From: Macrostomum lignano
Lineage: Eukaryota
Direction: 5' to 3'
Length of the DNA stretch: 64,000 nt
Assembly (NCBI GenBank): GCA_002269645.1
Contig: NIVC01002455.1
Coordinates: 1 to 64,000 of the forward strand
Position 1 is the stretch's first letter; every line of letters starts with the position of its first letter. Below, one piece after another: positions 13,388-61,565 of the stretch. The translations under genes and the position numbers were made by a program. The notes beneath the pieces were generated by a model. The model was not told the DNA's origin. It did no database searches and saw only the letters and a program-made list of their open reading frames with translations.

Positions 13388-13652
<265 letters not shown>

Positions 13653-32243: not shown

Positions 32244-34391
32244 ACTACTGCAATTGCCGACTGAGGCTTTAGAAGTCGAGCAGCTACGCTATATTTTGCA
32301 TAGGCTCATTCACCACTCATATCTAAAGTTTGAGAATGAGCTTTTGGAGCAGTCAACCTGCAAAATACTGTTGTGTTCTCCAGACAAAACTCGCTGATAT
32401 TCGCTTTTTGAATAACGTTAAATTGGGTTTTACGATATACATACTTGATTTATTTGTAACTATGAAGTCAGCAGGGATCGCAATTCAAATGTCTGAAACT
32501 TACAAAATCCTTGACAATTGTTTCTATTTACAGGGTCTCAAATGCCTTGAGTCCATGCACCCTAGACTTCTCATTTTTCTGTATTTTACTTTTTATTCAC
32601 CACTGCTATGCATAAAAGCTACGAAATCATGCCTAAGAATGCTCATACTATTTTGTAATTCTAAGAACTAATACGTTTACGAAATGGTTCTGGGGATCTT
32701 TCTGTTGTAACTGTTAAAAGTACATTCGAAAGTACGTGGTTTGTATTGGAAAATTTGAAAATGTCCTGCTATCGAGCCTTCTCTGTATGCATTTGTGAAC
32801 AAAACTGTTAATTCAAGAGCTAACGATCCTGTCGTCCTTAAGTTCGAGAGAAAAGACAAGTAACGGTATCCAAAGTGTTTGATTTATCGGCTCAAACGAG
32901 TCTCTCAAGCCATGCAAACCGTGGGAACGTCAACGTTGTCCGAAAATGTGAGCAGATCAATACTGGCGAATCCCTCTATTAAGGACCGGGAATGAGTGTC
33001 ATACAGATATACATACAACACGTCAGTTTTAGTATATTGAGAGAGCCATCATCTTTTTCTGATCATGATGACTACATGCAGTTTGGACATTTTTGTCAAT
33101 TGTAATTAAGGGCCTTGACAAGCCTAGAAGTAGGTTTTTTTATCCAACTCATTGCAGAATCGGTGTCACTTGCATTTCTTGGCCTTTCTCACTTCAGATG
33201 GAGTTGCGGGCGGCTTGTTGAAAAAGCTCCATGCCCCTCCGGATTCCGGTTTTCATAGCATCAATTCGGTGATGGCTTTTGGCCTTCCGCCTGAGATTCC
33301 CCAGCTCCGAGTTCTACCACGGTCTTGTCTTTGTAGGGACAGACAGGGCAGGCTGCGATGCAGCCCTTCAAGCGTCTTGGCCATTTGATGAACTTCCTCG
33401 CAGGTTTCAACCTTGAGTTCAATTCATGCAGGGTGCATATATCAAAGGTACATGTAACTACGTATCGCGCCGTTAAGTGTTGATTTTTAGGCAGATTTGA
33501 CGCAAAAAACGCAAATTATACTACTATCTGAAAATGAAGTAAGTAGTATACAAAAACGCTATCCTAAGCGTGATTCAATATGTAGTTGTAATAATCCATG
33601 TGCTCATATTAATTCCATGTACATTAATCCCTATCTATCTCAAATTGTACATTAATTCCATGTACATTAATCCCTATCTATCTCAAATTGTACATTAATT
33701 CCATGTACATTAATCCCTATCCCAAATTGTCCATCCCCAATTCTATATGTACATGTGCATTAATCTACAGTGTCATCCCCAGCGCGCGCGCGCACCAAAA
33801 TTACAACTCGAAACCCTACTATATGTACAGTGTACAATCTCATCTACTACTACCAAATGAGTCAACTAATTGTGTAGCCTACAACGTAAATGTATATTTC
33901 CAATGTACATTTCTCAGACATTTGAATAATACGGGTCGGAGTCTATATGTACATCGATAGCCTCTATACTCATATCCGCTACATACCCCAAAAATTAGGT
34001 ATGTACATTTCCACCCTCGGAGAATGTAGGTTTGAATATGCTGATAATTTATTCGAAATCACTTATAAAATACACATACTTTCATATAGAGGCGGGCCTG
34101 TACAAACTCTCGCCAAGCGATGGGGTGGAGGTTGCGTCATCCAAGCCTCTCCCCAAGTCTGCCCCCCAAATACAAGACTGTGTTGAAGCAGTGCTTTATA
34201 TTTCTATTGACAGTGGGTATGATACAAGAAGCTTCGTCGCGCTTTAATTACAGTAAACCATCCCCTCGAAGCTCCTATACTGAATGCTGAATCACCCTTT
34301 AACTCGGACCATAGTCAAATTCAACCGTGTTCGAAAACAGCCACCCCTCCGATGTTCACCAGACTCGTCTTCACAGCGCAGACCCATAGCA

Positions 34392-37300
34392 TATCGAGCT
34401 AAATTTTAACACTCGCCCCTGTTCTCTCTGTCCCCCTTCTAAATGCCAAGGAATTTCAACCCTCTCTCCATTTTTCAGTGTACAGACAGATCTTTCCACA
34501 GCACCGATCCCTATATTAAACTTCATTCAGCAAAACCCCTCTCTTCTCCGATTACGTCATCCATGCCGCCCCAGATAGCAAGAATGCACACATCAACCCC
34601 ACGAATCTGAGCAAATCCGAGTCCACCAACCTCTACCAGCATTGACAAACCCCAGATGCATTTGTAAATGTACACAGCCTATGAATCAGTGTCTCCACCG
34701 CATGCAATTCTGATTTACTTGATCTAAACTTTGTAAATAGTATAAGTCACCCTTGCGTTATACTAGAAGTAGTGAAGTCCACAAATTTAAATACGTGAGG
34801 CTATTCAATTCTGCTTCTCCGCCTCCCCTGCCTCTCACTTCAAGCTTTCAGATTTGGTCTTTGAGACGGTTTAATCTGTTAGAAGCAGGAATGAATCATG
34901 CACTGACCTCTCCATACAAAGTAAAGTTGGAATTTCAGACAAGAAATTAGGTTATTTTAAAAGCTAAATGACTAGAAATGCACATTTTTTTCATTAAAAT
35001 GCAGCTTTTCACCGTTTTTTTACGATTTTAACCTTAAAATGCAGACTTTATTGATCAAAATCAGTAGTTTCATCACTAGAAACCATACTTTCAACAGCTA
35101 ATTTGTCCAAATGTCGCTTTCAACTTGACCTTAGACAGCTTTTAAGCAGGAATGAACCCCACACAAACATCCACAAGCCAGCCCAAAATCATCCAAAGAC
35201 ATGGCTATTGAAGCCTAAATTGCTAGAAATGCGCATTTTTTCATAAGAAAATACAATTTTTACAGTTTTTATGCATTTTTTACGTTAAAATGCAGATTTT
35301 ATTGATCAAAATCAGTAGTTTCATCACTAGAAACCATACTTTCAACAACTAATTTGTCCAAATGTCGCTTTCAACTTGACCTTAGACAGCGTTTAAGCAG
35401 GAATGAACCCCACACAAACATACACAAGCTAGCCCAAAATCATCCAAAGACATGGCTATTGAAGCCTAAATTGCTAGAAATGAGCATTTTTTCCTAAGAA
35501 ATACAAATTTTCACAGTTTTTACGCATTTTTTACGTTAAAATGCAGACTTTATTGATCAAAATCAGTAGTTTCATCACTAAAAACCACAATTTTAACACA
35601 AAATTATCACAAATGCTACTTCTGGAACTCTGAGACAGCTTTGAGCAGGAATTATAATCGCACACGGATTACCCGAGCCAGTCCAATTTCCACTAAAGCC
35701 ATGGTTTTTTAAAGCTAATTCTTAGAATTTCTCATTCTTTCGTTTAATAAAGGCCAATTTTCACAGTTTTATTATTTTCTAACGTTAAAATGCGAAATGC
35801 GAATTGATCAAACTTAGTAGTTTCATCCCAAAAGCCATAATTTCAACCGCTAATTTGTCCAAATGCTGATTTCAAAGTTGGCAAGAGACAGCTTTCGAGC
35901 AGGAATGAGTCACACACTGATCTCCATATGCACACCCCGGCCCAAGTTGGAATTCCACCCAAGACATTTTCATTGAAAACTAAATTACTAGAAATTGCAC
36001 ATTTTCGTTTTAAAAAGGTCAATTTTCACAGTTTTTACTCTTTTTAACGTTAAAATGCTGACTTTATTGAACAAAATTAATCACTTCATCAGCAGAAACC
36101 ATAATTTTTACAACTTAATGCTGTTTCATCATTCAAATGTATGTATTTGGTACGTGTAATACCCCTCAAGAAGTCAGGGAAGGGATTATTCTTGAATATT
36201 GGGTTAAAACCTACAGTTTGCTATAAACCTAGCTATAATAATTTTAACATATACAGTCGGCGAAGCGGCCCGTTGATTTCGATTGACATTTAAACTGTCC
36301 CTCCCAGACCTCTCTCTCTCTCCTTCTGCACCCACCGAGAAAAGTGACTCATGCGGCAATCAGCTGGACAGGTTTAGTGTATTACTGAATTGGCAAAACA
36401 GCCAACACCCAATGGTCATATTAGACTCGTCTTCACAGCACAGACCCATGTAGAACAGAACCACTCGTCCCTGTCTCTCTGACCTTACCATTTCTAACTG
36501 TCAAGGAATTCCGACCCTCCCTCTCCAATTTCAGTGTACAAACAGATATTTTCACAGCACAGACTCATATATTGAGCCTCCTCCAACCAAAACCCTATCT
36601 TGATTACGTCATCCACCTCCCCCATAGAAGCAGTTAGCAAGAAACAAAATTTTTCGATGCACATATGAACACTGTGGACCATGCAAAATCGCACATCTAC
36701 GGGTCGATTTTGATTGACAATTTAATACCCTTTGTTGATGCTGCTGTGTACAGTAGTCTTATTTCCGAAGCTCCTAGCAGTCATCTTTTAGATGTGGTGA
36801 ATCAGTGTTGTTTTTGCCAACTTTACATCTTGATTCATCCTCCAAATTCTTCAACTCTGACCATATTCAATAATTTAACCCATGCAAGTAGATTTGCCAA
36901 TTCGCCAAATTAGCCAATACGAATGGGGCCAGAGGACCCACCCAAATCGAGCCCTTGTCTCTCTCAGGCCTCTCTCTCCTACACATACCCCAGAAAAGTG
37001 ACTCATGAGGCAATCAGTTTAACAGGTTCAGTATACTGAATTGGCAAAACAGCAAACACCCAATGGTCAATGGACTCGTCTTCGCAGCACAGACCATTTT
37101 GAATAAAGCCAAAACACACATACACCCCTATTCTCTGACCAAACCTTTCCATTTCTAGTTGTCAACGAAATTCGACCGGCCTCTCTCTCAATCCCAATGT
37201 ACATTTTGACGAAGCAAGCAGATCTTTTCACAGCACGGACCCAGCCTCCCCCAACCAAAGCCCTATCTCTGATTACGTCATCTATACATCCCCATAGAAG

Positions 37301-40300
37301 CAGTTAGCAAGAAAAAAATTTCGATGCACATATATGAACAATGCGAACCAAGCAAATCCGCGCGTCTACCAAAGCCAACCCTACCCTGCGTGCTGTAATT
37401 GCATTTGTCAATGTACACACCCTATGAATCAGTGTCTCCTTCTTTGGAACACACGAAGGCATTAGTCAGAAAGTTTGGATGCAATTAAAAACTCTCTCGA
37501 TACTTTGCGTATAAACGAGTAATCGATTGAATCAATTGTACACTTGACACATTTAATTACGTGCTGCCATGCAACGGAAAGACAGGATAATGGGGTGGGT
37601 GGTCACGCAGCCTCATTCTCTCTTTCCTACTGATTTTTCATTATCTATCAATCTCAGCTCTTTCCGGGGCAACTCGCGCATTTGTGCATAGTTCCTCATC
37701 AGATTTACCACATGTTCATTTACATGTGATGTACATATGCAAGCGGCAGCCGATTTAAACCTGAGAAATGGTTGAAGCACTCCCCCGACTATGACTAAAT
37801 GCACGTACGTTCAGTCAAATACAGGAAAATTTGACACCCGTAGTATGAAGATGAAATCTTCACGAAAGCTTCACATGTTTATCTTTCTCTGGGGAAATGA
37901 CGATAGTTTCTCAATAAAAATCTGTCATAGGCCCAATATAGCAGTTTAAATATTTTCACGAAAATGTCGCATTATTCAAAGAACTGATTTTTGCAAACTC
38001 TACTGTCAGTAGGAAGATGAGTTTTCATAGAGACATTTTGTAAAAAATAGACTAAACTTTCAAATCATTCGTTTACACAGTAGAGACAGGGACTGTGCTG
38101 CGCACAGTCACGGTCCGGCCACCCTCCGCCCGCGCCGCCGCCTCTCAATGAATGTAAAATAGGAGTGTTAGTTCATGTATTAATGCTCCTTGACCTGCAA
38201 AAATTATACGGTTGCTAGGCAGTGTCGTAACACAGGACATGAGTTTTTCTGTAAAGTAATAATAACCCCACCATTAATATAGACAGTTGGTCGTGTAAAC
38301 GAATGATTTGAAAGTTTAGTCTATTTTTTACAAAATGTCTCTATGAAAACTCATCTTCCTACTGACAGTAGAGTTTGCAAAAATCAGTTCTTTGAATAAT
38401 GCGACATTTTCGTGAAAATATTTAAACTGCTATATTGGGCCTATGACAGATTTTTATTGAGAAACTATCCTCATTTCCCCAGAGAAAGATAAACATGTGA
38501 AGCTTTCGTGAAGATTTCATCTTCATACTACGGGTGTCAAATTTTCCTGTATTTGACTGAACGTACGTGCATTTAGTCATAGTCGGGGGAGTGCTTCAAC
38601 CATTTCTCAGGTTTAAATCGGCTGCCGCTTGCATATGTACATCACATGTAAATGAACATGTGGTAAATCTGATGAGGAACTATGCACAAATGCGCGAGTT
38701 GCCCCGGAAAGAGCTGAGATTGATAGATAATGAAAAATCAGTAGGAAAGAGAGAATGAGGCTGCGTGACCACCCACCCCATTATCCTGTCTTTCCGTTGC
38801 ATGGCAGCACGTAATTAAATGTGTCAAGTGTACAATTGATTCAATCGATTACTCGTTTATACGCAAAGTATCGAGAGAGTTTTTAATTGCATCCAAACTT
38901 TCTGACTAATGCCTTCGTGTGTTCCAAAGAAGGAGACACTGATTCATAGGGTGTGTACATTGACAAATGCAATTACAGCACGCAGGGTAGGGTTGGCTTT
39001 GGTAGACGCGCGGATTTGCTTGGTTCGCATTGTTCATATATGTGCATCGAAATTTTTTTCTTGCTAACTGCTTCTATGGGGATGTATAGATGACGTAATC
39101 AGAGATAGGGCTTTGGTTGGGGGAGGCTGGGTCCGTGCTGTGAAAAGATCTGCTTGCTTCGTCAAAATGTACATTGGGATTGAGAGAGAGGCCGGTCGAA
39201 TTTCGTTGACAACTAGAAATGGAAAGGTTTGGTCAGAGAATAGGGGTGTATGTGTGTTTTGGCTTTATTCAAAATGGTCTGTGCTGCGAAGACGAGTCCA
39301 TTGACCATTGGGTGTTTGCTGTTTTGCCAATTCAGTATACTGAACCTGTTAAACTGATTGCCTCATGAGTCACTTTTCTGGGGTATGTGTAGGAGAGAGA
39401 GGCCTGAGAGAGACAAGGGCTCGATTTGGGTGGGTCCTCTGGCCCCATTCGTATTGGCTAATTTGGCGAATTGGCAAATCTACTTGCATGGGTTAAATTA
39501 TTGAATATGGTCAGAGTTGAAGAATTTGGAGGATGAATCAAGATGTAAAGTTGGCAAAAACAACACTGATTCACCACATCTAAAAGATGACTGCTAGGAG
39601 CTTCGGAAATAAGACTACTGTACACAGCAGCATCAACAAAGGGTATTAAATTGTCAATCAAAATCGACCCGTAGATGTGCGATTTTGCATGGTCCACAGT
39701 GTTCATATGTGCATCGAAAAATTTTGTTTCTTGCTAACTGCTTCTATGGGGGAGGTGGATGACGTAATCAAGATAGGGTTTTGGTTGGAGGAGGCTCAAT
39801 ATATGAGTCTGTGCTGTGAAAATATCTGTTTGTACACTGAAATTGGAGAGGGAGGGTCGGAATTCCTTGACAGTTAGAAATGGTAAGGTCAGAGAGACAG
39901 GGACGAGTGGTTCTGTTCTACATGGGTCTGTGCTGTGAAGACGAGTCTAATATGACCATTGGGTGTTGGCTGTTTTGCCAATTCAGTAATACACTAAACC
40001 TGTCCAGCTGATTGCCGCATGAGTCACTTTTCTCGGTGGGTGCAGAAGGAGAGAGAGAGAGGTCTGGGAGGGACAGTTTAAATGTCAATCGAAATCAACG
40101 GGCCGCTTCGCCGACTGTATATGTTAAAATTATTATAGCTAGGTTTATAGCAAACTGTAGGTTTTAACCCAATATTCAAGAATAATCCCTTCCCTGACTT
40201 CTTGAGGGGTATTACACGTACCAAATACATACATTTGAATGATGAAACAGCATTAAGTTGTAAAAATTATGGTTTCTGCTGATGAAGTGATTAATTTTGT

Positions 40301-41979
40301 TCAATAAAGTCAGCATTTTAACGTTAAAAAGAGTAAAAACTGTGAAAATTGACCTTTTTAAAACGAAAATGTGCAATTTCTAGTAATTTAGTTTTCAATG
40401 AAAATGTCTTGGGTGGAATTCCAACTTGGGCCGGGGTGTGCATATGGAGATCAGTGTGTGACTCATTCCTGCTCGAAAGCTGTCTCTTGCCAACTTTGAA
40501 ATCAGCATTTGGACAAATTAGCGGTTGAAATTATGGCTTTTGGGATGAAACTACTAAGTTTGATCAATTCGCATTTCGCATTTTAACGTTAGAAAATAAT
40601 AAAACTGTGAAAATTGGCCTTTATTAAACGAAAGAATGAGAAATTCTAAGAATTAGCTTTAAAAAACCATGGCTTTAGTGGAAATTGGACTGGCTCGGGT
40701 AATCCGTGTGCGATTATAATTCCTGCTCAAAGCTGTCTCAGAGTTCCAGAAGTAGCATTTGTGATAATTTTGTGTTAAAATTGTGGTTTTTAGTGATGAA
40801 ACTACTGATTTTGATCAATAAAGTCTGCATTTTAACGTAAAAAATGCGTAAAAACTGTGAAAATTTGTATTTCTTAGGAAAAAATGCTCATTTCTAGCAA
40901 TTTAGGCTTCAATAGCCATGTCTTTGGATGATTTTGGGCTAGCTTGTGTATGTTTGTGTGGGGTTCATTCCTGCTTAAACGCTGTCTAAGGTCAAGTTGA
41001 AAGCGACATTTGGACAAATTAGTTGTTGAAAGTATGGTTTCTAGTGATGAAACTACTGATTTTGATCAATAAAATCTGCATTTTAACGTAAAAAATGCAT
41101 AAAAACTGTAAAAATTGTATTTTCTTATGAAAAAATGCGCATTTCTAGCAATTTAGGCTTCAATAGCCATGTCTTTGGATGATTTTGGGCTGGCTTGTGG
41201 ATGTTTGTGTGGGGTTCATTCCTGCTTAAAAGCTGTCTAAGGTCAAGTTGAAAGCGACATTTGGACAAATTAGCTGTTGAAAGTATGGTTTCTAGTGATG
41301 AAACTACTGATTTTGATCAATAAAGTCTGCATTTTAAGGTTAAAATCGTAAAAAAACGGTGAAAAGCTGCATTTTAATGAAAAAAATGTGCATTTCTAGT
41401 CATTTAGCTTTTAAAATAACCTAATTTCTTGTCTGAAATTCCAACTTTACTTTGTATGGAGAGGTCAGTGCATGATTCATTCCTGCTTCTAACAGATTAA
41501 ACCGTCTCAAAGACCAAATCTGAAAGCTTGAAGTGAGAGGCAGGGGAGGCGGAGAAGCAGAATTGAATAGCCTCACGTATTTAAATTTGTGGACTTCACT
41601 ACTTCTAGTATAACGCAAGGGTGACTTATACTATTTACAAAGTTTAGATCAAGTAAATCAGAATTGCATGCGGTGGAGACACTGATTCATAGGCTGTGTA
41701 CATTTACAAATGCATCTGGGGTTTGTCAATGCTGGTAGAGGTTGGTGGACTCGGATTTGCTCAGATTCGTGGGGTTGATGTGTGCATTCTTGCTATCTGG
41801 GGCGGCATGGATGACGTAATCGGAGAAGAGAGGGGTTTTGCTGAATGAAGTTTAATATAGGGATCGGTGCTGTGGAAAGATCTGTCTGTACACTGAAAAA
41901 TGGAGAGAGGGTTGAAATTCCTTGGCATTTAGAAGGGGGACAGAGAGAACAGGGGCGAGTGTTAAAATTTAGCTCGATA
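34392..41979. repeat. Uninterrupted inner palindrome: 3687-bp arms around a 214-bp spacer
   Basis: 34392-38078 is the reverse complement of 38293-41979. One mismatch was seen by eye (37901/38470); an alignment was not run. Confidence 0.95.
34960..36110. repeat. ~250-bp tandem subrepeat within the fold-back arm (3 close copies plus 2 degenerate), mirrored at 40261-41411
   Basis: The motif aaaatgcaga(c)tttattgatcaaaatcagtagtttcatcact recurs near 35036, 35288 and 35539. Confidence 0.85.
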
Positions 41980-42203
41980 CTAGCAATCTACGCCCCCCGT
42001 TGGGGAGCCAAAGAAATGCAATACACGTTTTTTTAATAAGCTACATGTATCCTTGAAATCTTAAAAAATCTCCTGTCAAACCTTGTAAGCCTTGACATGT
42101 CAGTAATTCCCCCCCCACAAGCTTTAACATATCAACTTCCCCCCTTGACATCTCAGCAATGCCCCCAATAAGCCTTGGAAATCTAAAAATATCTGTCAAC
42201 CTT

Positions 42204-42254
42204 CTAACCCTAACCCTAGCCTAACCCTAACCCTAACCCTAACCCTAACCCTAA
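42204..42254 (-). repeat. Interstitial telomere-type tract, (CCCTAA)n on the plus strand, ~8 units; degenerate copy at ~42468-42515
   Basis: ctaaccctaaccctagcctaaccctaaccctaaccctaaccctaaccctaa, within a ~290-bp duplicated block. Confidence 0.9.
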
Positions 42255-42919
42255 AGCATTGAAATTTCAGTAATTCTCTCTAAGAGTCATTATAGCACTA
42301 CTACAGCATTATAGCGATTCCCTGCAAGCCTCGACATCGTAGGGATTCCCAAATGAATCTCTTAACTTCGACATGAAGCTTCTTGTAAGCCTTGACATGT
42401 CAGCGATGGCCCCCATTAACCTTGAAATCTAAAAAATCCCCTGTTAACCTTGAAACCCGATAAAATATAACCCTCAACCCAAACCTGACCTAAACCTAAC
42501 TTTAACCCAACCTAAAGCCTTGAAATCTCAGCAATTCTTCTCCCCTAAGCCTTGACATTTTAGTGATTCCTTCTTTAAGAATCACAGCACTATAACGATT
42601 TCCACCAAGCTTTGACATCGTAGCAATTCCCAAATGAATCTTTTAACTTCGACATGACTTTTCTTTTATGTATACATAGTGCTACTTTTATTTTTTACAT
42701 GACTCTTCTTCTATCAGCGCCCCCCGTGGCGAGCCAACAAAGAATGCAATAAAAAATTGAGTAAAGTACATGAACTTTGAAGTAGCTTCTGACTGTTGCT
42801 TTGACATCTCAGAAACCCCCCCCCCTCCGTAATCTCAGTTATTCTCTGATCAGTTATTCTCTGAGAGCCTTTACGTCTCAGTTTTTCTCCCCAGCACAGC
42901 ATTATAGCTGCATTTAATT

Positions 42920-44350
42920 TTTACATGACACCCTTCATGTCTGACATGACGCTTCTTTTATTCTACCATGATGCTTCTTAATTTTTTAAATGACACTTTC
43001 ATTAGCTTTTAAATGAGGCTTCTATGATTTTTTCATGACGCTCCTATGATTTTTTTACATGACGCTTCTATGATTGTTTACATGACGCTTCTATGCTTTT
43101 TATATGACGCTTCTATGATTTTTACATGAAGCTTTTATGATTTTTTACATGACGCTTCCATGATTTTTTACATGACGCTTCTATGATTGTTTACATGACG
43201 TTTCTATGATTTTTTTACATGACGCTTCTATGACTGTTTACATGACGCTTCTATGCTTTTTATATGACGCTTCTATGATTTTTACATGACGCTTCCATGA
43301 TTTTTTACATGACGCTTCTATGATTGTTTACATGACGTTTGTATGATTGTTTACATGACGCTTCTATGATTTTTTTAAATAACGCTTCTATGATTTTTTT
43401 TAAATAACGCTTCTATGATTTTCAAATGACGCTTCTATGATTTTTTACATGACGCTTCTATGATTGTTTACATGACGCTTCTATGATTGTTTACATGACG
43501 CTTCTATGATTGTTTACATGACGCTTCTATGATTGTTTACATGACGCTTCTATCATTGTTTACATGACGCTTCTATGATTGTTTACATGACGCTTCTATG
43601 ATTTTTAAATGACGCTTGTACGATTTTTTACATGAGGCTTCTATGATTTTTTACATGACGCTTCTATGATTGTTTACATGACGCTTCTATGATTTTTTAC
43701 ATGACGCTTCTATGATTGTTTACATGACGCTTCTATGATTGTTTATACGACGCTTCTATGATTTTTACATGACGCTTCTATGCTTTTTACATGACGCTTC
43801 TATGATTTTTTACATGACGCTTCTATGATTGTTTCATGACGCTTCTATGATTTTTTACATGGCGCTTCTATGATTGTTTACATGACGCTTCTATGATTTT
43901 TTACATGACGCTTCTATGATTGTTTACATGACGCTTCTATGATTGTTTAAATGACGCTTCTATGATTGTTTACATGACGCTTCTATGATTGTTTACATGA
44001 CGCTTCTATGATTGTTTACATGACGCTTCTATGATTGTTTACATGACGCTTCTATGATTTTTTACATGACGCTTCTATGATTGTTTACATGACGCTTCTA
44101 TGATTGTTTACATGACGCTTCTATGATTGTTTAAATGACGCTTCTATGATTGTTTACATGACGCTTCTATGATTTTTTACATGACGCTTCTATGATTGTT
44201 TACATGACGCTTCTATGATTTTTTACATGACGCTTCTATGATTGTTTACATGACGCTTCTATGATTTTTTACATGACGCTTCTATGATTGTTTACATGAC
44301 GCTTCTATGATTTTTTACATGACGCTTCTATGATTTTTACATGACGATTC
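42920..44350. repeat. ~23-bp satellite (acatgacgcttctatgattgttt), ~60 units
   Basis: Direct reading. Units vary in T-run length and homogenise towards the right. Confidence 0.96.
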
Positions 44351-49048: not shown

Positions 49049-49105
<57 letters not shown>

Positions 49106-52100: not shown

Positions 52101-55100
52101 AGAACGCGACCATCCCCCCACTTGAGAGAAAATACACTGCCAAGATAGAAAAATTTTATGGCGCAATCACTAAAATTGATACAAATTTTCAGCTCCAAGC
52201 AGAAAGAGGGGACAATTAAGATTATCAAAGGTCAAGACCGCCATTTTCTGCTTTTTTAGGGATCTTAAAAATTGAAAATGAAAGATTAAAATAGCCTAAA
52301 GCCATCCTCGGAAAATTTGCAGTTTTCCCATATAAGTTTCAACGCTGACTTGCAAGTATTCTAGGAGGAGTTATCCAACAAACACACACACACACAGACA
52401 AACAACGCACCAGTTTTAGTATTAAGACGAGGCCAACTCCTCCTTCGGAGAAGAAAGGGGAAGAACTCCAATCAGCGGAATTCCATTCCCTGAACTCCAT
52501 AAGCGGAATCCCATTTTCCAACACCTCTCCGCGCAACAGAAATCGTCTCCGTGAAACTGAACACTATCGAAATCCTCTCCGTGAAACTGAACACCATCGA
52601 AATATTCTCCGCGAAATAGAAATCCTCTCCGTGAAACTGGACTAAATCGAAATTTCTACGTCAAATAGCCCAGCTCTCAGAATTCATTGGTTAGGGTTAG
52701 GGTTAGGGTTGACAGCTGCGTGTTGAAAGGCTCCGTAAAAACATTGAACCAATTAAATTGCGCAACTTATTTCTCAGGCAGTCAGTATCAGCCTCAGTTA
52801 AAGTTAACAAAAAGATTGCGCAATCTAAATCAACCCTCAAATACACAGCAACCGACCCCCCTTCCAATACGCAGTGCAGCTAGAAATTGAACTCCCCCCC
52901 ACCAACTATTGGGGGTCGGTCGAACCCCCATTGAACTCCAAAATGAGCACAATCTTTGCAGAAAGCTAAAAGTATGAAAATCTTTTCTTGAATGCTGTGA
53001 ATTTAATTTTCATATTTAAAGCAAAAAACTTATATCCCCGAACTCATTGCAGCAAGATCTTTCCAGCAATATAAGTCTCTCCTCTCTAAGTTCAAAACTC
53101 GAGCAACAGTTAGTGTTTGAAACTTTCTGATTTTAAGCATTGAAATATCGAGTGTACGTTCACTGCCTGCTAAAGATGCTCGCAAGTTTATGCATTAAAA
53201 TGCACTGAATTTCACTGTGCAAAAAATACACAGGGTTTCCTGTTAAAAAACAGAACACAAATAGTTGCGCAATTGTCTATAAAGTCAGTCAGTGAGCCAG
53301 GGTTCAAGTGTACACACGCAGCCACTGAGAACGCGACCATCCCCCCACTTGAGAGAAAATACACTGCCAAGATAGAAAAATTTTATGGCGCAATCACTAA
53401 AATTGATGCAAATTTTCAGCTCCAAGCAGAAAGAGGGGACAATTAAGATTATCAAAGGTCAAGACCGCCATTTTCTGCTTTTTTAGGGATCTTAAAATGT
53501 AAAAATGCAATATTAAAATAGCCTAAAGCCATCCTCGGTAAATTTGCAGTTTTCCAATATAGGTTTCAACGCTGAGTTGCAAGTATTCTAGGAGGAGTTA
53601 TGCAACAGACAAACAAACACACAAACATCGCACCAACTTTAGTATATAAGTGGAACTCCTCCTTCGGAGGAGAAATGGGAAGAACTCCCATCACCGGAAT
53701 TCCATTCCCTGAAATATCCACCAACTGAAATTGCATTTCTTGAACCCTATTTTCCCAATCGTCTCCAAATTCTTTACAAAACCTTTCAAAGACCATGGCT
53801 CAAAGACTCTCACGTCTCTGATATCTCCTCTCTCCTCTCTTTGCTATTATCGTGACTCTCTTCTCTCTCCTCTCTCTCATCTCATCTCCACCCCTACTCC
53901 TTATTTATCTCTTCTCCCTTGTCTTTCGTCTGTACCTTCTCCTGTCTCTTGTCTCCTCTCTTCTCTCATATCTCTCCTCTTCACTTCTGTCTCCTGTATC
54001 CTCTCTTCGCTCTTATCTCTTCCTCTTCTCTTCTCTCTCATGTCATCTCTACTCACTTGTCTATCGTCTCTCTTAACCCTCTCTTTCTTCTCTTTTCTCT
54101 CCTCTCTGCTCTCATTTTTCATATCTCATATACGCTCTCACACTCTACTTTCTTGTCTCCCATCCTTCTTTCCTCCTTTCCACTATCCCCTGTCTCTTCT
54201 CTTCTCTCTTTTCTATCCTCTCCATTCTCTCTTCTCTCCTCTCCTTGCTCCTTTCATCTTCTCCCCTCTCTTCTCTCCTCTCCTTGCTCCTTTCATCTTC
54301 TCCCCTCTCTTCTCTAATCTCTAATCTCTTCTCTGTTATGTCCTCACTCATCTCTTCTCATCACATCTCTCATCCCTCCTCTCCTCACTACTTTCCTCTC
54401 TTAACTCTCTCATCTCTGATCTTTCATCTCTCTCCTCTCTCCTCTCTCTCTTCTCCTTTCGCTTCTCTCTCCTCTCTCTCCTCTCATCTCTACTACCTTA
54501 TTTATATCTTCTCCCTGATCTTTCGTCTCTACTCTCTCCTGTCTCCTTCCTCCCCTCTTTTCTCCTCTCTTCTCTCTCCCCTCCTCTCTCATCTCTCATC
54601 CTTCATCTCACTCTTTCTTTCTCCTCTACTTTCCCCTCTCTTCTATTTCCTCTGTACGCTCTTATCCCTCATCTATTCTCTATCCTATCATCTCTCTTGT
54701 CTCCCTCTGTTATCTCATATCTCCCCTCTCATCTCCTATCTCCTTTTCTCTTCTCCCTCCTTTGTTCCGGCCTTACTCCCCTCTTCTCTCCCATCTGTTT
54801 AGCGGAATGGGCGTTCGCGCCTTCCCGCTGTGTCTCCCCGGGACAGCCCTGCAGCTAAGTCTCCCATCTGTCATGTCTAATCTCTCCACTCATTTCTACT
54901 CTGTTTTCTATCATCTCATCTCTCTTCTCTTTTCATTCTTCTCTTTACTCTCTTCTCTGACTGATTGAAGATGGCAAATTCATCAAGATCCTCTCCGCAA
55001 AGCAGTCCGTGCAACTGAAAACCATCGAAATCCTCTCCTTGAAACTTAATTCCATTAAAATCGTCTCCATAAAACCGAAATCAATCATAAATTATCTCCG

Positions 55101-58100
55101 CGAAACAGAAATACTCTCCGTGAAACTGAACACCATCGAAATCCTCTCCACGAAACAGAAATCCTCTCCGTCAAAATTAAAACATTGAAATCGTCTCCGC
55201 TAACTGGACTCAATCAATTTTTTTCCGTCAAACAACTTAACTCTCCGGATTCATTGGTTAGGGTTAGGGTTAGGGTTAGGGTTAGGGTTAAAGCTACACA
55301 TAGCTTCGTGTTAAAAGGCACTGATAAAAATATTGAACTAATTGAATCAATTCATTGCGCAACCGATTTCACAGTCAGTAAGTATCAGTCTCAGTTAAAG
55401 TTATTAAAAACATTGCGCAATCTAAATCAACCCTCCAATACACAGCAGCAGTGAGAAGTTGAATCCTCCCCCCAACTTTGTCTATTACGTCTCGCAAAAC
55501 TGAGTACAATTTTTGCAGAAAGTTAAAAGTATGGAAATACTTTTTCAAATGCTGAGCTTTTTCTTTTCATATTTAAAGCAAACAACTTATATCCCCGAAC
55601 TCAGCGTTGCAAGATCTTTCCAGCAATATCAGTTTCTCCTATCAAAGTTTAAAACTCGAGGAACATTTAGCGTTTAAAACTGTCTGATTTATAGCATTGA
55701 AGTATCGAGTGTACGTTCACTGCCTGCTTGCAAGTTGATGCATTGAATTTCAATGTCCAACAAATACACAGGGCTGCCCATTGAAAGGCAGGAAAACTTA
55801 TCAGTAGCCATATCATTGCGCAATTATCTATACAGTCAGCCAGTGAGCCAGGGTCCAAGTGTACACACGCAGCCACTGAGAACGCTCCCACCCCCCACTG
55901 GAAAGAAAATACACTACAGAGATAGGGAAAAGTTGTGGCGCAATCACTAAAAATTCATGCATTTTTTCAGCTCCAAGCAGAAAGAGGGGACAATTAAGAT
56001 TATCAAAGGTCAAGATTCAAGTTTTCTGCTTTTTTGAGGATCTTAGAAATTAAAATTTCAGAACTAAAATAGCCTATAGCCGACCTCGGATTATTTCCAA
56101 TCTTCCCATATAAGTTTCAACGCTGAGTTGGCACTATTCAAGGAGGAGTTGTCGAAATGACAGACAGACAGACAGACAAACAACACGTCAACTTTAGTAT
56201 ATATAGACAGACGAGGCCAACTCCTCCTTCGGAGAAGAAAGGGGAAGAACTCCAATCAGCGGAATTCCATTCCCTGAACTCCATCAGCGGAATCCCATTT
56301 TCCAACACCTCTCCGCGCAACAGAAATCGTCTCCGTGAAACTGAACACTATCGAAATCCTCTCCGTGAAACTGAACACCATCGAAATATTCTCCGCGAAA
56401 TAGAAATCCTCTCCGTGAAACTGGACTAAATCGAAATTTCTACGTCAAACAGCCTAGCTCTCAGAATTCATTGGTTAGGGTTAGGGTTAGGGTTAGAGCT
56501 ACACACAGCTGCGTGTTGAAAGGCGCCGTAAAAACATTGAACCAATTAAATTGCGCAACTTATTTCTCAGGCAGTCAGTATCAGCCTCAGTTAAAGTTAA
56601 CACAAAGATTGCGCAATCTAAATCAACCCTCCAATACACAGCAACCGACCCCCCTTCCAATACGCAGTGCAGCTAGAAATTGAACCCCCCCCCACCAACT
56701 ATTGAGGGGTCGGTCGAACCCCCATTGAACTCCAAAATGAGAACAATCTTTGCAGAAAGCTAAAAGTATGAAAATCTTTTCTTGAATGCTGTGAATTTAA
56801 TTTTCATATTTAAAGCAAAAAACTTATATCCCCGAACTCAGCGCTGCAAGCTCTTTCCAGCAATAAAAGTCTCGTCTCTCAAAGTTAAAAAATCGAGCAA
56901 CAGTTAGCGTTTGAAACTTTCTGATTTTAAGCATTGAAATATCGAGTGTACCTTCACTGCCTGCTAAAGATGCTCGCGAGTTTATGCATTAAAATGCACT
57001 GAATTTCACTGTGCAAAAAATACACAGGGCTTCCTGTTAAAAAACAGAACACAAATAGTTGCGCAATTGTCTATAAAGTCAGCCAGTGAGCCAGGGTCCG
57101 ATTGTACACACGCCGCCAATGAGAACGCGCCCATTCCCCCACAGGAGAGAAAATGCACTGGCGACATAGGAAAAAGTTGTGGCGTAATCACTCAAACTTT
57201 ATGCCAATTTTCAGCTCCGAGCAGAAAAAGTGTCCAGAGAAGGTTAGGAAATCAGATTTCTGCTTTTTTAGGGATCTTAAAATTAAAAAATGAAAGATTA
57301 AAACAGCCTAAAGCCGATTCCGGAAAATTTGCAGTATTCCCATATAAGTTTCAACGCTGAGTTGCACGTAGTCTAGGAGGAGATATCCTACAAACAAACA
57401 GACAAACAAACAAACAAACAACGCACCAACTTTAGTATTAACGAGGCCAACTCCTCCTTCGGAGAAGAAAGGGGAAGAACTCCAATCAGCGGAATTCCAT
57501 TCCCTGAACTCCATCAGCGGAATCCCATTTTCCAACACCTCTCCGCGCAACAGAAATCGTCTCCGTGAAACTGAACACTATCGAAATCCTCTCCGTGAAA
57601 CTGAACACCATCGAAATATTCTCCGCGAAATAGAAATCCTCTCCGTGAAACTGGACTAAATCGAAATTTCTACGTCAAACAGCCCAGCTCTCAGAATTCA
57701 TTGGTTAGGGTTAGGGTTAGAGCTACACACAGCTGCGTGTTGAAAGGCTCCGTAAAAACATTGAACCAATTAAATTGCGCAACTTATTTCTCAGGCAGTC
57801 AGTATCAGCGTCGGTTAAAGTTAACAAAAAGATTGCGCAATCTAAATCAGCCCTCCAATACACAGCAACCGACCCCCTTCCAATACGCAGTGCAGCTAGA
57901 AATTGAACCCCCCTACCAACTATTGGGGGGGGGTCGGTCGAACCCCCATTGAACTCCAAAATGAGCAAAATCTTTGCAGAAAGCTAAAAGTATGAAAATC
58001 TTTTCTTGAATGCTGTGAATTTAATTTTCATATTTAAAGCAAAAAACTTATATCCCCGAACTCATCGCAGCAAGATCTTTCCAGCAATATAAGTCTCTCC

Positions 58101-58638
58101 TCTCTAAGTTCAAAACTCGAGCAACAGTTAGTGTTTGAAACTTTCTGATTTTAAGCATTGAAATATCGAGTGTACGTTCACTGCCTGCTAAAGATGCTCG
58201 CAAGTTTATGCATTAAAATGCACTGAATTTCACTGTGCAAAAAATACACAGGGCTTCCTGTTAAAATAAAGTCAGCCAGTGAGCCAGGGTCCGATTGTAC
58301 ACACGCCGCCAATGAGAACGCGCCCATTCCCCCACAGGAGAGAAAATGCACTGGCGACATAGGAAAAAGTTGTGGCGTAATCACTCAAAATTTATGCCAA
58401 TTTTCAGCTCCGAGCAGAAAGAGGGGACAAATAAGATTATCAAAGGTCAGAATTGCTGCTTCCTGCTTTTTTAGGGATCTTAAAATTTAAAAATGAAAGA
58501 TTAAAATAGCCTAAAGCCATCCTCGGAAAATTTGCAGTTTTCCCATATAAGTTTCAACGCTGAGTTGCAAGTATTCTAGGAGGAGTTATCGAACTGACAT
58601 ACATACAGACAAACAACGCACCACTTTTAGTATTAAGA
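44940..58638 (-). repeat. Head-to-tail array of ~1.2-kb mini-Helitron-like units; eight short (TTAGGG)2-5 plus-strand tracts, one between each pair of consecutive 5' ends
   Basis: Nine minus-strand 5'-end motifs (TC)TTAATACTAAA/TCTATATATACTAAAG followed by (TGTT/TGTC)n and AACTCCTCC, near 44950, 47385, 48610, 51370, 52420, 53645, 56200, 57435 and 58635. Plus-strand TTAGGG tracts lie at 45977, 47653, 50030, 51461, 52689, 55257, 56473 and 57703. Confidence 0.8.
45130..45790. repeat. CT-rich low-complexity block 1 (related blocks at ~48790-49800 and ~53820-54960)
   Basis: Polypyrimidine tracts with shared sub-motifs (ctctatt, tctactctcc). They give spurious Ser/Leu-rich ORFs. Confidence 0.9.
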
Positions 58639-61565
58639 AGAAGAAGAAAGAAGAAGACAGAGACAGAGGATATGCTATGGGTCTGCGCTGTGAAGACGAG
58701 TCTGGTGAACATCGGAGGGGTGGCTGTTTTCGAACACGGTTGAATTTGACTATGGTCCGAGTTAAAGGGTGATTCAGCATTCAGTATAGGAGCTTCGAGG
58801 GGATGGTTTACTGTAATTAAAGCGCGACGAAGCTTCTTGTATCATACCCACTGTCAATAGAAATATAAAGCACTGCTTCAACACAGTCTTGTATTTGGGG
58901 GGCAGACTTGGGGAGAGGCTTGGATGACGCAACCTCCACCCCATCGCTTGGCGAGAGTTTGTACAGGCCCGCCTCTATATGAAAGTATGTGTATTTTATA
59001 AGTGATTTCGAATAAATTATCAGCATATTCAAACCTACATTCTCCGAGGGTGGAAATGTACATACCTAATTTTTGGGGTATGTAGCGGATATGAGTATAG
59101 AGGCTATCGATGTACATATAGACTCCGACCCGTATTATTCAAATGTCTGAGAAATGTACATTGGAAATATACATTTACGTTGTAGGCTACACAATTAGTT
59201 GACTCATTTGGTAGTAGTAGATGAGATTGTACACTGTACATATAGTAGGGTTTCGAGTTGTAATTTTGGTGCGCGCGCGCGCTGGGGATGACACTGTAGA
59301 TTAATGCACATGTACATATAGAATTGGGGATGGACAATTTGGGATAGGGATTAATGTACATGGAATTAATGTACAATTTGAGATAGATAGGGATTAATGT
59401 ACATGGAATTAATATGAGCACATGGATTATTACAACTACATATTGAATCACGCTTAGGATAGCGTTTTTGTATACTACTTACTTCATTTTCAGATAGTAG
59501 TATAATTTGCGTTTTTTGCGTCAAATCTGCCTAAAAATCAACACTTAACGGCGCGATACGTAGTCATGTAGCCTTTTAGGCTGCGTCTAATCTGCAGTAT
59601 TTCGGATTTTACACCTCCAGGTAATCAAAGACTGGGACTTAGTGACCGCGATGTTAAAGGCGATGAAGCGTGGTCAGACAGAAAGGGTTCCTCGAACTGT
59701 ATTTTTCCGAAAACCTGCTTCCTAAAATTTTTCATGAAACGAGGTTTCCCGTCCTTCTACTTGAGTAGTCCATGGTATTTTGGTTAGTGTTTGCGAGTGT
59801 TAGTTCGGGCACTCAAAAGGGTGGAGAAGTAGACGTTGGCTCCACCTGCGTATTAATTGTCTGACAGAACATCATCCAGTTCATCGCGAGTGCGTGGGGG
59901 AACATGCATGCTTGTGTAAGCTAGGGGAGTGGATTAGACTGATCGGGGGCGCTGTGTCACGAATACCAAGCTGAATGCCCCGAACTGTATGACTGTATGT
60001 CCCTTCAAAACAGACTGTATGCTATTAATAAAGACATTCAGAATCGAAGAGTAAAACAGCTAATAAAGCCGAAAAAAGTGGTATCATAAAACAATACTTA
60101 CTTGAATTACTGATTATCCAAATTAATATTTATAGAGGCGGTTGTAAAAAGCAGCGATAATGTTAGATACATACTTCTTTTAATTTTTCAGACATTTAAT
60201 GCTGTATTCTGTATCCGATATTATGCTACGCCTTCTTTTTTAACTGATGCACGATACTTCCTATTTAAACTATTCTGTACGGTACGCGATACCAATGATA
60301 TCCTGAATGTAATATTTGCGTGTTGATCCGGATCTATTAGTTCAAAGTAAAATATAGTTTAATCGAACTTTTCTCTGTCTATATTTGACTAACCAGGTCG
60401 CAAAATATACTTTAATTATACAGATTCATATGTTAAGTTTTCTAGGTTATATAGTGGTGTTCTACTGTTCAGGGTCAGGGGTGTAGGGAGGAGGATCGGA
60501 TGGGGTATGTGTCACTCCAAACAGCCATTTTTTGAAGTTTGCTTTTTTAATAAGTATATGTCCATTGTGAAAGTAATTTATTCCCCCAAAAGAAATTTCT
60601 GGCCATATGCACCTGGTGTTGCTGTTATTTATAATATAAACATAAATTGTATTTTATTTATCTAGCTACTTACAGTTTGCTAATATTTTTGCACTACCAA
60701 TACCTTTACAATAGTTTAGCTCGACCTACACATACAATAGACACTTCCTTCCCTCTTGCTATTATTAAAAAATAGCAAGACTCCACAAAGTTAAATTTAT
60801 CTCTTAGAGTTTAATCAATATTTCAGGTTTTTTTATATAGATTATTGTATAAAAATTTAGATAACAAATTTCTATAGGCCTACTCTTTTTATATTAATAG
60901 CTGTAACTAAATAAATAGGCCTAGGACTAACCCATCAGTTAGACTGATGTTTAATTAGAAAAATATCATAGTCATACTTATGCTAGGCTTCCAAAAGATA
61001 GGCAAATAGCTACGTGTAGCACATAAGGATTGTAACCATGAGAACTATAATATAAAAATTATATTAGATAAAGTAGATATACTCATATTGAAGTAGATAT
61101 AACCTTGTAAAAAACCTTGTATTGTATATTAAATATTGTTGTATGAATTTAGATATACAATAAATAAGTTTGTATGCTTGTATGCTCATAAATGTTTATT
61201 AGAATGTATTTTTTTTCTTAACCAAATGGAAATTATTAAAAAACTAAATAATATAATTTAAACTGAAAACTAAAGAGGACTAACTTTTTCATATTAGTAA
61301 AATAAGCAAGACCTGTCTAGATCATGACCCTTGACTTAAAGCTTAGAAATTGATAAATTAAATCAATCCAGAAAAATATTTATGACTAGTCATATTGTAT
61401 TTAATATTTTTTAGATATCAAGTTAAAATGATTTTAGAATTTCTACACTTTAGTAAGGGTAGATTTCATTAAAACCAAAACTTTGTCTCGTTAATAGCTT
61501 TATTAAAAAAATTATTTCAATGAACACTTTTCCAATTCATGCTTAACCAATAAAGAATCTCACTA

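What the first reader, a model, noticed from the sequence alone, without database searches (positions are those of the whole stretch)
33451..59570. Giant non-coding fold-back element: ~4.6-kb identical arms, 214-bp spacer and a clean 6-bp target-site duplication
Seen: with the nested 16.7-kb insert removed, this is a ~9.4-kb near-perfect palindrome with termini 5'-ACTACGTATC...GATACGTAGT-3', flanked on both sides by CATGTA. No transposase or polymerase ORF is present. Established: 6-bp TSDs with long TIRs are typical of Polinton/Maverick elements, but these usually end 5'-AG..CT-3' and encode pPolB and integrase. MULE-type foldbacks have 8-11-bp TSDs and Galileo has 7-bp TSDs. Inference: this may be a copy-back/snap-back derivative in which one end of a linear element was copied onto itself and then integrated in trans, or a new foldback family. 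The TSD, the arm-specific 43-bp indel, a point mismatch and an insertion in only one arm argue against a fold-back read artefact.
Basis: partly seen in the sequence, partly recalled or inferred. Interest (0 to 1): 0.82.

Follow-up and report, generated by a model that had tools for sequence, protein, structure and literature searches.

The report
Giant non-coding foldback transposon copy
A 9.4-kb stretch of an animal genome that consists almost only of two mirror-image 4.6-kb arms, sits between a duplicated 6-base target site and has been split by a second mobile element is a real but fairly ordinary "foldback" type of defective DNA transposon, not evidence for a new virus-like replication product.

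Summary
The arms are 33457-38078 and 38293-41979 plus 58673-59564, with a 214-bp spacer. They differ by one mismatch and one 43-bp indel. CATGTA flanks both ends, and a 16,689-bp insert sits in one arm. The arms and spacer encode nothing: the longest ORF is 90 aa and a six-frame Pfam search gave no hits.

The arms are built of old sub-repeats (43 bp, 251 bp, about 450 bp; 72-91% alike) but are 99.98% identical to each other. The octamer ATGTACAT is clustered 160-550 bp from both tips.

Best reading: a non-autonomous, TIR-only foldback-type DNA transposon, moved in trans by an enzyme that makes 6-bp staggered cuts. Its long arms arose by recent inward extension or homogenisation of the inverted repeats.

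A close precedent is published: Galileo copy 112 of Drosophila willistoni (9,021 bp, TIRs of 4,246 and 4,680 bp, no transposase, nested elements, identical TSDs).

The termini (5'-AC...GT-3') fit neither Polinton nor IS3EU/GingerRoot, and nothing supports a Polinton snap-back origin.

The nested insert reads as a non-autonomous Helitron-like element carrying satellite arrays.

No second copy could be reached, so the family and its partner enzyme remain unknown.

The parts
33451..33456 (.). Left copy of the 6-bp target-site duplication, CATGTA
   Evidence: Directly abuts the first base of the left arm. It is identical to 59565-59570.
33457..38078 (+). Left arm (4,622 bp), uninterrupted; terminus ACTACGTATCGCGCC...
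   Evidence: Inverted repeats I1, I2 and I5. The alignment shows one mismatch and one 43-bp gap against the right arm. There is no ORF over 90 aa and no Pfam hit in six frames.
33608..33736 (+). 43-bp tandem repeat in the left arm, with one unit more than its mirror at 59330-59413; this is the '43-bp indel'
   Evidence: TRF rows, repeat family D1, and the alignment gap.
33617..34008 (.). Subterminal cluster of the palindromic octamer ATGTACAT (7 copies; mirror cluster of 6 copies at 59056-59404); a candidate binding-site array
   Evidence: The window holds 20 copies against 0.77 expected from shuffles. Seventeen lie in the element, and 13 of those lie 160-550 bp from the two tips.
34955..36115 (+). 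Degenerate array of about 4.6 copies of a 251-bp repeat inside the arm (mirror at 40256-41416)
   Evidence: TRF and self-BLAST of the arm, 73-91% identity between units.
34235..34700 (+). Copy 1 of a roughly 450-bp module repeated three times per arm; its mirror copy is where the nested element landed
   Evidence: Self-BLAST and a three-way alignment with 72% mean column identity.
36296..36780 (+). Copy 2 of the roughly 450-bp module
36956..37440 (+). Copy 3 of the roughly 450-bp module
38079..38292 (.). Unique, non-palindromic 214-bp spacer at the centre
   Evidence: Lies between the arms of I1; sequence read. It has no match elsewhere in the window.
38293..41979 (-). Inner 3,687 bp of the right arm
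   Evidence: I1; one mismatch to the left arm.
41980..58668 (-). Nested 16,689-bp non-coding element, Helitron-like when read on the minus strand. It starts 5'-TC after a host A, has a 7-bp GC stem with a 3-nt loop ending 12 nt before a 3'-CTAG, and is followed by a host T. Its interior is made of direct tandem arrays.
   Evidence: Junctions read; hairpin. The 3' end occurs once in the window. Internal repeats are all direct. The terminal unit is truncated into a purine-rich microsatellite. No Pfam domain was found in the ten longest informative frames. Criteria taken from PMC2267711.
58669..59564 (-). Outer part of the right arm; its first 4 bp (GATA, 58669-58672) repeat 41976-41979
   Evidence: I2 and I5; junction comparison with the intact arm.
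59565..59570 (.). Right copy of the 6-bp target-site duplication, CATGTA

Best explanation
This is one copy of a non-autonomous, TIR-only ('foldback'-type) class II DNA transposon. It carries no gene.

What it offers to an enzyme made elsewhere in the genome is two identical tips (ACTACGTATC...) and, 160-550 bp inside each tip, a cluster of the palindromic octamer ATGTACAT that could serve as a binding-site array.

Integration by staggered cuts 6 bp apart, followed by fill-in, produced the CATGTA duplication.

The 4.6-kb arms are not an ancient feature. They are an old, internally repetitive sequence that was recently copied in inverted orientation, or recently homogenised. The likely route is aberrant repair or template switching between the two inverted ends, which pulls internal sequence into the TIRs. 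The 214-bp spacer marks where copying stopped.

Afterwards one arm gained or lost a 43-bp repeat unit, one base changed, and a Helitron-like element carrying satellite arrays inserted into one arm.

Shown: the anatomy, the target-site duplication, the lack of coding capacity, the motif clusters, and the relative ages of sub-repeats and arms.

Inferred: mobilisation in trans, the class of enzyme, the route by which the arms grew, and whether the palindrome formed before this insertion or at this site.
For: - Exact inverted termini abut a 6-bp direct repeat.
- The arms are 99.98% identical over 4,579 bp, while the sub-repeats within an arm are only 72-91% alike.
- There is no ORF over 90 aa and no Pfam hit in six frames, and no Rfam or tRNA hit.
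- ATGTACAT occurs 20 times against 0.77 expected and is concentrated near both tips.
- The flanks are unique and unrelated to each other.
- The insert is in one arm only and has its own junction signature.
- Published precedent exists for the same architecture and for TIR extension by tandem repeats, by recruitment of internal sequence and by nested elements: Galileo copy 112, 9,021 bp with TIRs of 4,246 and 4,680 bp and no transposase (PMC4168063).
- Large inverted repeats with spacers of a few hundred bp are tolerated: two 6-kb Ty elements with a 280-bp spacer are stable in wild-type yeast (PMC7999016).
Against: Only one copy is available. No second copy exists in the window or in any collection I could scan, so a family, a consistent TSD length and a partner transposase are all undemonstrated. 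The termini match no superfamily I could check. In a palindrome made by inverted duplication the two tips are identical by construction, so the tips alone do not prove that an enzyme defined them. The case for transposition therefore rests on a single 6-bp duplication.
Confidence: 0.6

Rival explanations
1. In-situ growth. A conventional transposon with short or moderate TIRs inserted here and made the CATGTA duplication. Later a break inside it was repaired using its own other end as template, in inverted orientation. This overwrote the original interior and right half with a mirror copy of the left half. Under this reading the palindrome as such never moved.
For: The arms are far younger than the sequence they contain. 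The spacer is unique. Recruitment of internal sequence into TIRs is documented for Galileo (PMC4168063), and palindromic duplication seeded by short inverted repeats next to a break is documented (PMC7999016). The target-site duplication is equally explained by the original insertion.
Against: Nothing in one copy separates this from transposition of an already palindromic donor. It is a variant of the best explanation rather than its opposite.
Confidence: 0.2
2. One end of a linear, protein-primed virus-like element (Polinton/Maverick type) folded back, was copied onto itself to give a molecule with two identical ends, and was then integrated by the family's integrase, giving a 6-bp duplication.
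For: A 6-bp TSD is characteristic of Polintons and other integrase-related elements (PMC10045372; PMC6839031). A palindrome with outward-facing identical tips and a loop-like spacer has the geometry expected of a snap-back product.
Against: There is no polymerase, integrase, capsid or protease remnant in 4.8 kb, although the arms are essentially undecayed relative to each other. The termini are AC...GT, not the AG-type ends reported for Polintons. No Polinton gene is seen elsewhere in the window. The terminus is absent from 2.9 million viral contigs. The arms consist of satellite-like sub-repeats, which is typical of foldback TIRs.
Confidence: 0.06
3. Assembly artefact. The central palindrome, or the short-cut through a 214-bp 'spacer', was created by chimeric fold-back reads or by a mis-join between long inverted repeats. 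This could hide a larger, perhaps coding, interior.
For: Near-identical 4.6-kb inverted repeats are a classic cause of assembly errors and of chimeric long reads. I have no read data.
Against: A fold-back read gives symmetric flanks. Here the flanks are unique and differ from each other, and they carry a direct 6-bp repeat. The right arm continues correctly on the far side of a 16.7-kb insert at the exact mirror position. The arms differ by a repeat unit and by one base.
Confidence: 0.07
4. Not a transposon. An extrachromosomal palindromic DNA (a replicated hairpin fragment) was captured by end-joining at a chromosomal break with 6-nt staggered ends.
For: The tips of such a molecule are identical by construction, and fill-in of a staggered break gives a short duplication.
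Against: Neither tip lost a single base. The tips carry symmetric clusters of a palindromic octamer, as transposon ends often do. This model also needs an unexplained 6-nt staggered break.
Confidence: 0.05

Closest known systems
Extended-TIR, TIR-only copies of Galileo (P superfamily) in Drosophila willistoni, especially copy 112 (PMC4168063)
   Same: Size and build are almost the same: 9,021 bp against 9,415 bp, and TIRs of 4,246 and 4,680 bp against 4,622 and 4,579 bp. Both lack a transposase, both have tandem repeats inside the TIRs, other mobile elements nested in the TIRs, and identical flanking duplications.
   Different: Galileo makes 7-bp (rarely 8-bp) duplications, whereas this element has 6 bp. 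The arms here are far more alike (99.98%). The host here uses TTAGGG-type repeats and is not an insect by that token (own knowledge). No sequence relation was tested because no Galileo sequence was at hand.
Foldback (FB)-like elements, e.g. Tm1 of root-knot nematodes (PMC3169594)
   Same: Composite inverted arms built of sub-repeats, little or nothing between them, and non-autonomous members moved in trans.
   Different: Tm1 is flanked by 8-10 bp duplications, mostly 9 bp, and its arms are made of 13-15-bp units. Here the duplication is 6 bp and the units are 43, 251 and about 450 bp.
Polinton/Maverick
   Same: A 6-bp target-site duplication and terminal inverted repeats.
   Different: By definition these encode a protein-primed polymerase and an integrase (PMC5499653 abstract); none is present here. 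The reported termini start with AG, whereas these start with AC. Their TIRs are far shorter (own knowledge).
IS3EU / GingerRoot
   Same: A 6-bp target-site duplication; TIR-bearing cut-and-paste elements found in animals.
   Different: Their termini are TA...TA (occasionally TG...CA) and their TIRs are 100-150 bp. Here the termini are AC...GT and the arms 4.6 kb. Re-parsing the junction to TG...CA destroys both the duplication and the terminal symmetry.
Palindromic duplication by snap-back at a break next to a short inverted repeat (yeast and mammalian cell models, PMC7999016)
   Same: Produces long, perfect arms around a short asymmetric centre. This is a plausible route for how these arms arose.
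   Different: Those events give palindromic chromosomes or amplicons, not a discrete unit with defined tips and a target-site duplication.
Non-autonomous Helitrons carrying a microsatellite and tandem arrays (e.g. in the Pacific oyster, PMC8268682); applies to the nested insert only
   Same: 5'-TC, 3'-CTAG, a GC hairpin 12 nt from the 3' end, host A and T at the junctions, no TIRs, and a microsatellite followed by tandem arrays.
   Different: The insert is very large (16.7 kb), has almost no 5' box, and its junction carries 2 extra bases (equivalently, a 4-bp duplication). It encodes no Rep/helicase.

Membership tests
Foldback-type / TIR-only non-autonomous DNA transposon (structural class) | Two long inverted arms make up nearly the whole element, with a short or absent middle | tested here: met
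   Arms of 4,622 and 4,579 bp around a 214-bp spacer.
Foldback-type / TIR-only non-autonomous DNA transposon (structural class) | Arms are composite and built of sub-repeats | tested here: met
   43-bp, 251-bp and roughly 450-bp repeats inside each arm.
Foldback-type / TIR-only non-autonomous DNA transposon (structural class) | Flanked by a target-site duplication | tested here: met
   CATGTA on both sides.
Foldback-type / TIR-only non-autonomous DNA transposon (structural class) | Multiple dispersed copies sharing the termini, each with its own duplication of constant length | not testable with these tools
   No eukaryotic genome collection is on hand. There were no hits in the window or in the viral, metagenome and prokaryote-genome scans.
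Polinton/Maverick | 6-bp target-site duplication | tested here: met
   the 6-bp criterion is from PMC10045372.
Polinton/Maverick | Termini beginning 5'-AG | tested here: not met
   The element begins 5'-AC and ends GT-3'; criterion from PMC6839031.
Polinton/Maverick | Encodes a protein-primed DNA polymerase B and a retrovirus-like integrase | tested here: not met
   Six-frame Pfam of arm plus spacer gave no families at E<=1. A non-autonomous derivative cannot be excluded on this feature alone.
Polinton/Maverick | Termini shared with an autonomous Polinton of the same genome | not testable with these tools
   The source genome is not available.
IS3EU / GingerRoot | 6-bp target-site duplication | tested here: met
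IS3EU / GingerRoot | TA...TA (rarely TG...CA) termini | tested here: not met
   The termini are AC...GT. A TG...CA parse needs a 2-base indel in the terminal repeat and leaves no flanking duplication.
Galileo (P superfamily) | 7-bp (rarely 8-bp) target-site duplication | tested here: not met
   The duplication is 6 bp and cannot be extended; the bases next to it differ on the two sides. Criterion from PMC4168063.
Mutator-like foldbacks (Tm1 type) | 8-10 bp, mostly 9-bp, target-site duplication | tested here: not met
   6 bp here; criterion from PMC3169594.
Helitron (nested insert 41980-58668, minus strand) | 5'-TC and 3'-CTAG termini flanked by host A and T | tested here: met
   The junctions read ...GCATA|TCCTCTG... 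and ...GATTGCTAG|TATCGAG; criteria from PMC2267711.
Helitron (nested insert 41980-58668, minus strand) | 16-20-bp palindrome 10-15 bp upstream of the 3' terminus | tested here: met
   A 17-nt hairpin (7-bp stem, 3-nt loop) ends 12 nt before the terminus. Its folding energy alone is not exceptional (z = -1.2).
Helitron (nested insert 41980-58668, minus strand) | No target-site duplication | tested here: inconclusive
   The intact arm reads GCATATCGAG. The interrupted arm fits either a 4-bp duplication or an A|T insertion with 2 extra bases at one end.
Helitron (nested insert 41980-58668, minus strand) | Rep/helicase gene (autonomous members only) | tested here: not met
   No domain in the ten longest informative frames. 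If it is a Helitron, it is non-autonomous.

The most novel reading that the evidence does not exclude
The copy belongs to an undescribed family of foldback elements mobilised by an integrase-related enzyme. This is the only enzyme group I found to make 6-bp duplications: Polinton, IS3EU/GingerRoot, Ginger2 and some LTR elements. The family would have a new terminal signature (5'-AC...GT-3') and ATGTACAT binding arrays. In the boldest version, the copy is a snap-back derivative of a virus-like linear element.
Probability: 0.15. Interest if true: 0.6.

Novelty: new member of a known kind. Interest (0 to 1): 0.3.

Why it matters
If the family can be traced, it would add a foldback lineage with a rare 6-bp duplication and unusual termini, and might point to its still unknown enzyme. 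A 4.6-kb perfect hairpin lying 1.2 kb downstream of a transporter gene is also a potential source of long double-stranded RNA and a potential fragile site, so it may matter locally for silencing and genome stability. As it stands it is one more example of how inverted ends of DNA transposons can grow to several kilobases. The nested Helitron-like element also shows how satellite arrays travel inside mobile elements.

Tried and rejected
- **Coding remnants.** The ORF list found nothing over 90 aa in the arms. Six-frame translations with X marking stops gave no families.
- **Known RNAs.** Rfam at gathering threshold and ARAGORN over the whole window found nothing, so there is no evidence for a SINE head or for small-RNA-gene targeting of the Dada kind.
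- **Other copies.**
  - BLAST of arm plus spacer against the rest of the window gave no hits.
  - The terminal 22-mer gave no hits in viral, metagenome or prokaryote-genome contigs.
  - A conserved 23-mer of the ~450-bp module gave no hits in metagenome or viral contigs.
  - The 23-bp satellite of the insert gave no hits in viral or genome contigs.
  - With hindsight the satellite would have been the better probe for the metagenome scan.
- **Source organism.** An exact look-up of an ASC-channel exon was not on record. Homologue searches with the ASC exon and with the GPCR ORF found nothing, so these collections appear to hold too few animal proteins for this purpose. The organism stays unknown.
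- **Literature search for the actual sequences.** Termini and satellite units matched no paper.
- **Alternative junction parses.**
  - A 4-bp CATG or a 5-bp duplication each breaks the terminal symmetry.
  - TG...CA ends need an indel and lose the duplication.
  - An 8-bp hAT-like duplication does not match.
- **Two independent head-to-head insertions of a 4.6-kb element.** Rejected because the inner junctions carry no matching duplication and the outer 6-mer match would then be coincidence.
- **The insert as a retroposon with a purine-rich tail and a 4-bp duplication.** Less likely than the Helitron reading, which fits four end features at once.
Full report
**1. The observation**

The inverted-repeat search finds three collinear arm pairs: 34392-38078 with 38293-41979, 33651-34395 with 58669-59413, and 33457-33678 with 59343-59564.

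I removed 41980-58672 and aligned the left arm to the reverse complement of the right arm. This gives 4,622 bp against 4,579 bp, with a single mismatch (37901 and its mirror 38470) and a single 43-bp gap. The gap is one unit of a 43-bp tandem repeat: 2.7 copies on the left and 2.0 on the right. It is therefore an ordinary slippage difference.

The spacer is 214 bp (38079-38292).

The tips read ACTACGTATC... and ...GATACGTAGT, and CATGTA lies immediately outside each. The bases beyond the 6-mer differ on the two sides, so the duplication is exactly 6 bp. The 15-nt tip occurs only at these two places in the window.

Every number in the finding is confirmed.

**2. Coding capacity**

The longest ORF in the arms is 90 aa. 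All six reading frames of arm plus spacer, with stops marked by X, match no Pfam family even at E<=1. Rfam and tRNA scans of the whole window are empty.

**3. Anatomy of an arm**

From the tip inward an arm contains:
- about 150 bp of unique sequence;
- the 43-bp tandem repeat;
- a 390-bp zone with seven copies of the palindromic octamer ATGTACAT;
- three dispersed copies of a roughly 450-bp module, 72% alike;
- about 4.6 degenerate copies of a 251-bp repeat, 73-91% alike.

ATGTACAT occurs 20 times in the window against 0.77 expected. Seventeen copies are in the element, and 13 of those lie 160-550 bp from the two tips. Subterminal arrays of a short motif are what transposase-binding regions usually look like. 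That is an inference, not a test.

The arms are 99.98% identical to each other but contain repeats that have diverged by 10-30%. So the inverted duplication, or the last homogenisation of the arms, is much younger than the sequence it copied.

**4. Surroundings**

The window is from an animal genome. It holds:
- a Ty3/Gypsy-type pol fragment;
- two amiloride-sensitive sodium-channel genes;
- a rhodopsin-type GPCR;
- what look like the last exons of a transporter gene ending near 32243.

The element therefore sits about 1.2 kb downstream of a gene. The two flanks are unique and unrelated to each other and to the element.

**5. The nested insert**

The intact arm reads ...AGCTCGATATGCTATGG..., so the interrupted arm has GATA on both sides of a 16,689-bp insert.

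Read on the minus strand, the insert has these features:
- it begins TC directly after a host A;
- it ends ...GCTCCCCAACGGGGGGC GTAGATTG CTAG directly before a host T;
- the GC hairpin has a 7-bp stem and a 3-nt loop and ends 12 nt before the terminus;
- there are no terminal inverted repeats.

These are the published Helitron end criteria (PMC2267711). The only misfit is two extra bases (TA) at one junction, which can equally be read as a 4-bp duplication.

The interior is entirely direct tandem structure:
- a 23-bp satellite of 61 copies;
- about eight 1.2-kb units nested in roughly 5-kb higher-order units;
- CT-rich low-complexity blocks;
- three short TTAGGG-type blocks.

The minus-strand 5' end is a microsatellite abutting a truncated unit. 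No protein domain was found.

This matches the 'boxes, microsatellite, tandem array' layout described for non-autonomous Helitrons in oysters (PMC8268682). The insert is in one arm only, so it arrived after the arms became identical.

**6. What the main element is**

The simplest account is a non-autonomous, TIR-only foldback-type DNA transposon integrated by 6-bp staggered cuts.

The literature holds a close structural precedent. Galileo copy 112 of Drosophila willistoni is 9,021 bp long and consists only of two TIRs of 4,246 and 4,680 bp. It lacks a transposase, contains tandem repeats and other elements, and is flanked by identical duplications (PMC4168063). The same paper lists routes of TIR extension: tandem-repeat expansion, recruitment of internal sequence into the TIRs, and transfer of a nested element from one TIR to the other. 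It attributes defective copies to abortive or template-switching gap repair.

The present copy is not a Galileo, because its duplication is 6 bp rather than 7. It is, however, the same kind of object.

**7. Which family?**

6-bp duplications are uncommon. The papers I read attribute them to Polintons, IS3EU/GingerRoot, Ginger2 and some LTR elements, all with integrase-related enzymes.
- Polinton termini begin with AG.
- IS3EU/GingerRoot termini are TA...TA or TG...CA, with TIRs of 100-150 bp.
- This element is AC...GT with 4.6-kb arms.

It fails a defining feature of each, so I do not file it under any of them. Foldbacks of the Mutator type (9 bp) and the P type (7 bp) are excluded by duplication length. 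The family therefore remains unnamed.

**8. The snap-back hypothesis**

The geometry fits a snap-back product: outward-facing identical tips and a loop-like centre. One caveat cuts both ways. In any palindrome made by inverted duplication the two tips are identical by construction, so the tips alone do not prove that an enzyme defined them.

The specific link to a protein-primed virus-like element has no support, for four reasons:
- The arms carry no gene remnant, although they are undecayed relative to each other.
- The terminal dinucleotides are wrong for a Polinton.
- The window holds no Polinton gene.
- The terminus is absent from the viral contig collection.

An equally good and more ordinary route is in-situ extension of the inverted ends of a conventional transposon, which would keep the original duplication. 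One copy cannot separate 'palindrome that moved' from 'transposon that became a palindrome here'.

**9. Artefact?**

A fold-back chimeric read would give mirror-image flanks. Here the flanks are unique and differ from each other, and they carry a direct 6-bp repeat. The right arm resumes at the exact mirror position beyond a 16.7-kb insert, and the arms differ by a repeat unit and a base.

A mis-join through the centre that hides a larger interior cannot be excluded without reads. I give an artefact about 7%.

A 214-bp spacer is in the range where large inverted repeats are tolerated in eukaryotic cells (PMC7999016).

**10. Limits**

No eukaryotic genome collection was available.
- Scans with the terminus, a conserved module motif and the insert's satellite found nothing in viral, metagenome or prokaryote-genome contigs.
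- Protein searches with host genes found nothing.
- A full-text search for the sequences found nothing.

Copy number, constancy of the duplication length, the partner enzyme and the host species are therefore untested.

**11. Verdict**

The finding is real and accurately described, and it is a handsome example. But it is a new member of a known kind: a giant TIR-only foldback derivative of a DNA transposon. The 6-bp duplication with AC...GT termini is the only feature that might lead somewhere new. Interest 0.3.

Noticed in passing
window 41980-58668 (minus strand): The 16.7-kb 'insert' has Helitron-type ends: 5'-TC, a GC hairpin 12 nt before a 3'-CTAG, and host A and T at the junctions. It carries only tandem arrays: a 23-bp satellite of 61 copies, 1.2-kb units in roughly 5-kb higher-order repeats, and CT-rich blocks. 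Two extra bases at one junction (or a 4-bp duplication) remain unexplained.
   Followed up: partly
window 42200-42254, 50016-50057, 55256-55318: Short interstitial telomere-type (TTAGGG/CCCTAA) blocks lie inside the nested element. The first is in the opposite orientation to the other two.
   Followed up: no
window 33617-34008 and 59056-59404: The palindromic octamer ATGTACAT is clustered near both tips of the foldback (20 copies in the window against 0.77 expected). It may be a binding-site array.
   Followed up: partly
window 33449-33456: The insertion site contains the 8-bp palindrome TACATGTA, offset by one base from the centre of the 6-bp duplication. It resembles the element's own subterminal GTACATGT at 33749. 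This could reflect target preference or chance.
   Followed up: no
window 13-1679: Fragment of a Ty3/Gypsy-type pol (RNase H, integrase zinc-binding and core domains), cut by the window start. The integrase is split over two overlapping reading frames (at least one frameshift), and its end runs into a 12/24-bp tandem repeat.
   Followed up: partly
window 7456-9265 and 11229-13387: Two tandem paralogues of an amiloride-sensitive sodium channel (ASC/DEG/ENaC family), each in a few large exons. The second is followed by a (GACA)68 microsatellite at 13386-13659.
   Followed up: partly
window 17834-18781: A single-exon rhodopsin-family GPCR ORF (Pfam 7tm_1, E = 1.6e-26).
   Followed up: partly
window 21855-24887: A 3-kb minisatellite of 101 copies of a 30-bp unit (93% matches). 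It is open in both directions for hundreds of codons (Ser/Asn/Leu-rich on the plus strand). Whether it is a coding repeat is unknown.
   Followed up: no
window 28125-32243: ORF fragments that look like membrane-transporter exons on the plus strand, the last ending at 32243. The foldback lies about 1.2 kb downstream, in a 3' UTR or just past the gene. Pfam was run only on the last ORF (31815-32243) and gave no hit, so the transporter reading rests on my reading of the translations.
   Followed up: no
window 4447-5043, 14482-14856, 16016-16706, 27430-27929: Several further minisatellites (21-, 26-, 34- and 45-bp units), so the region is unusually rich in tandem repeats.
   Followed up: no
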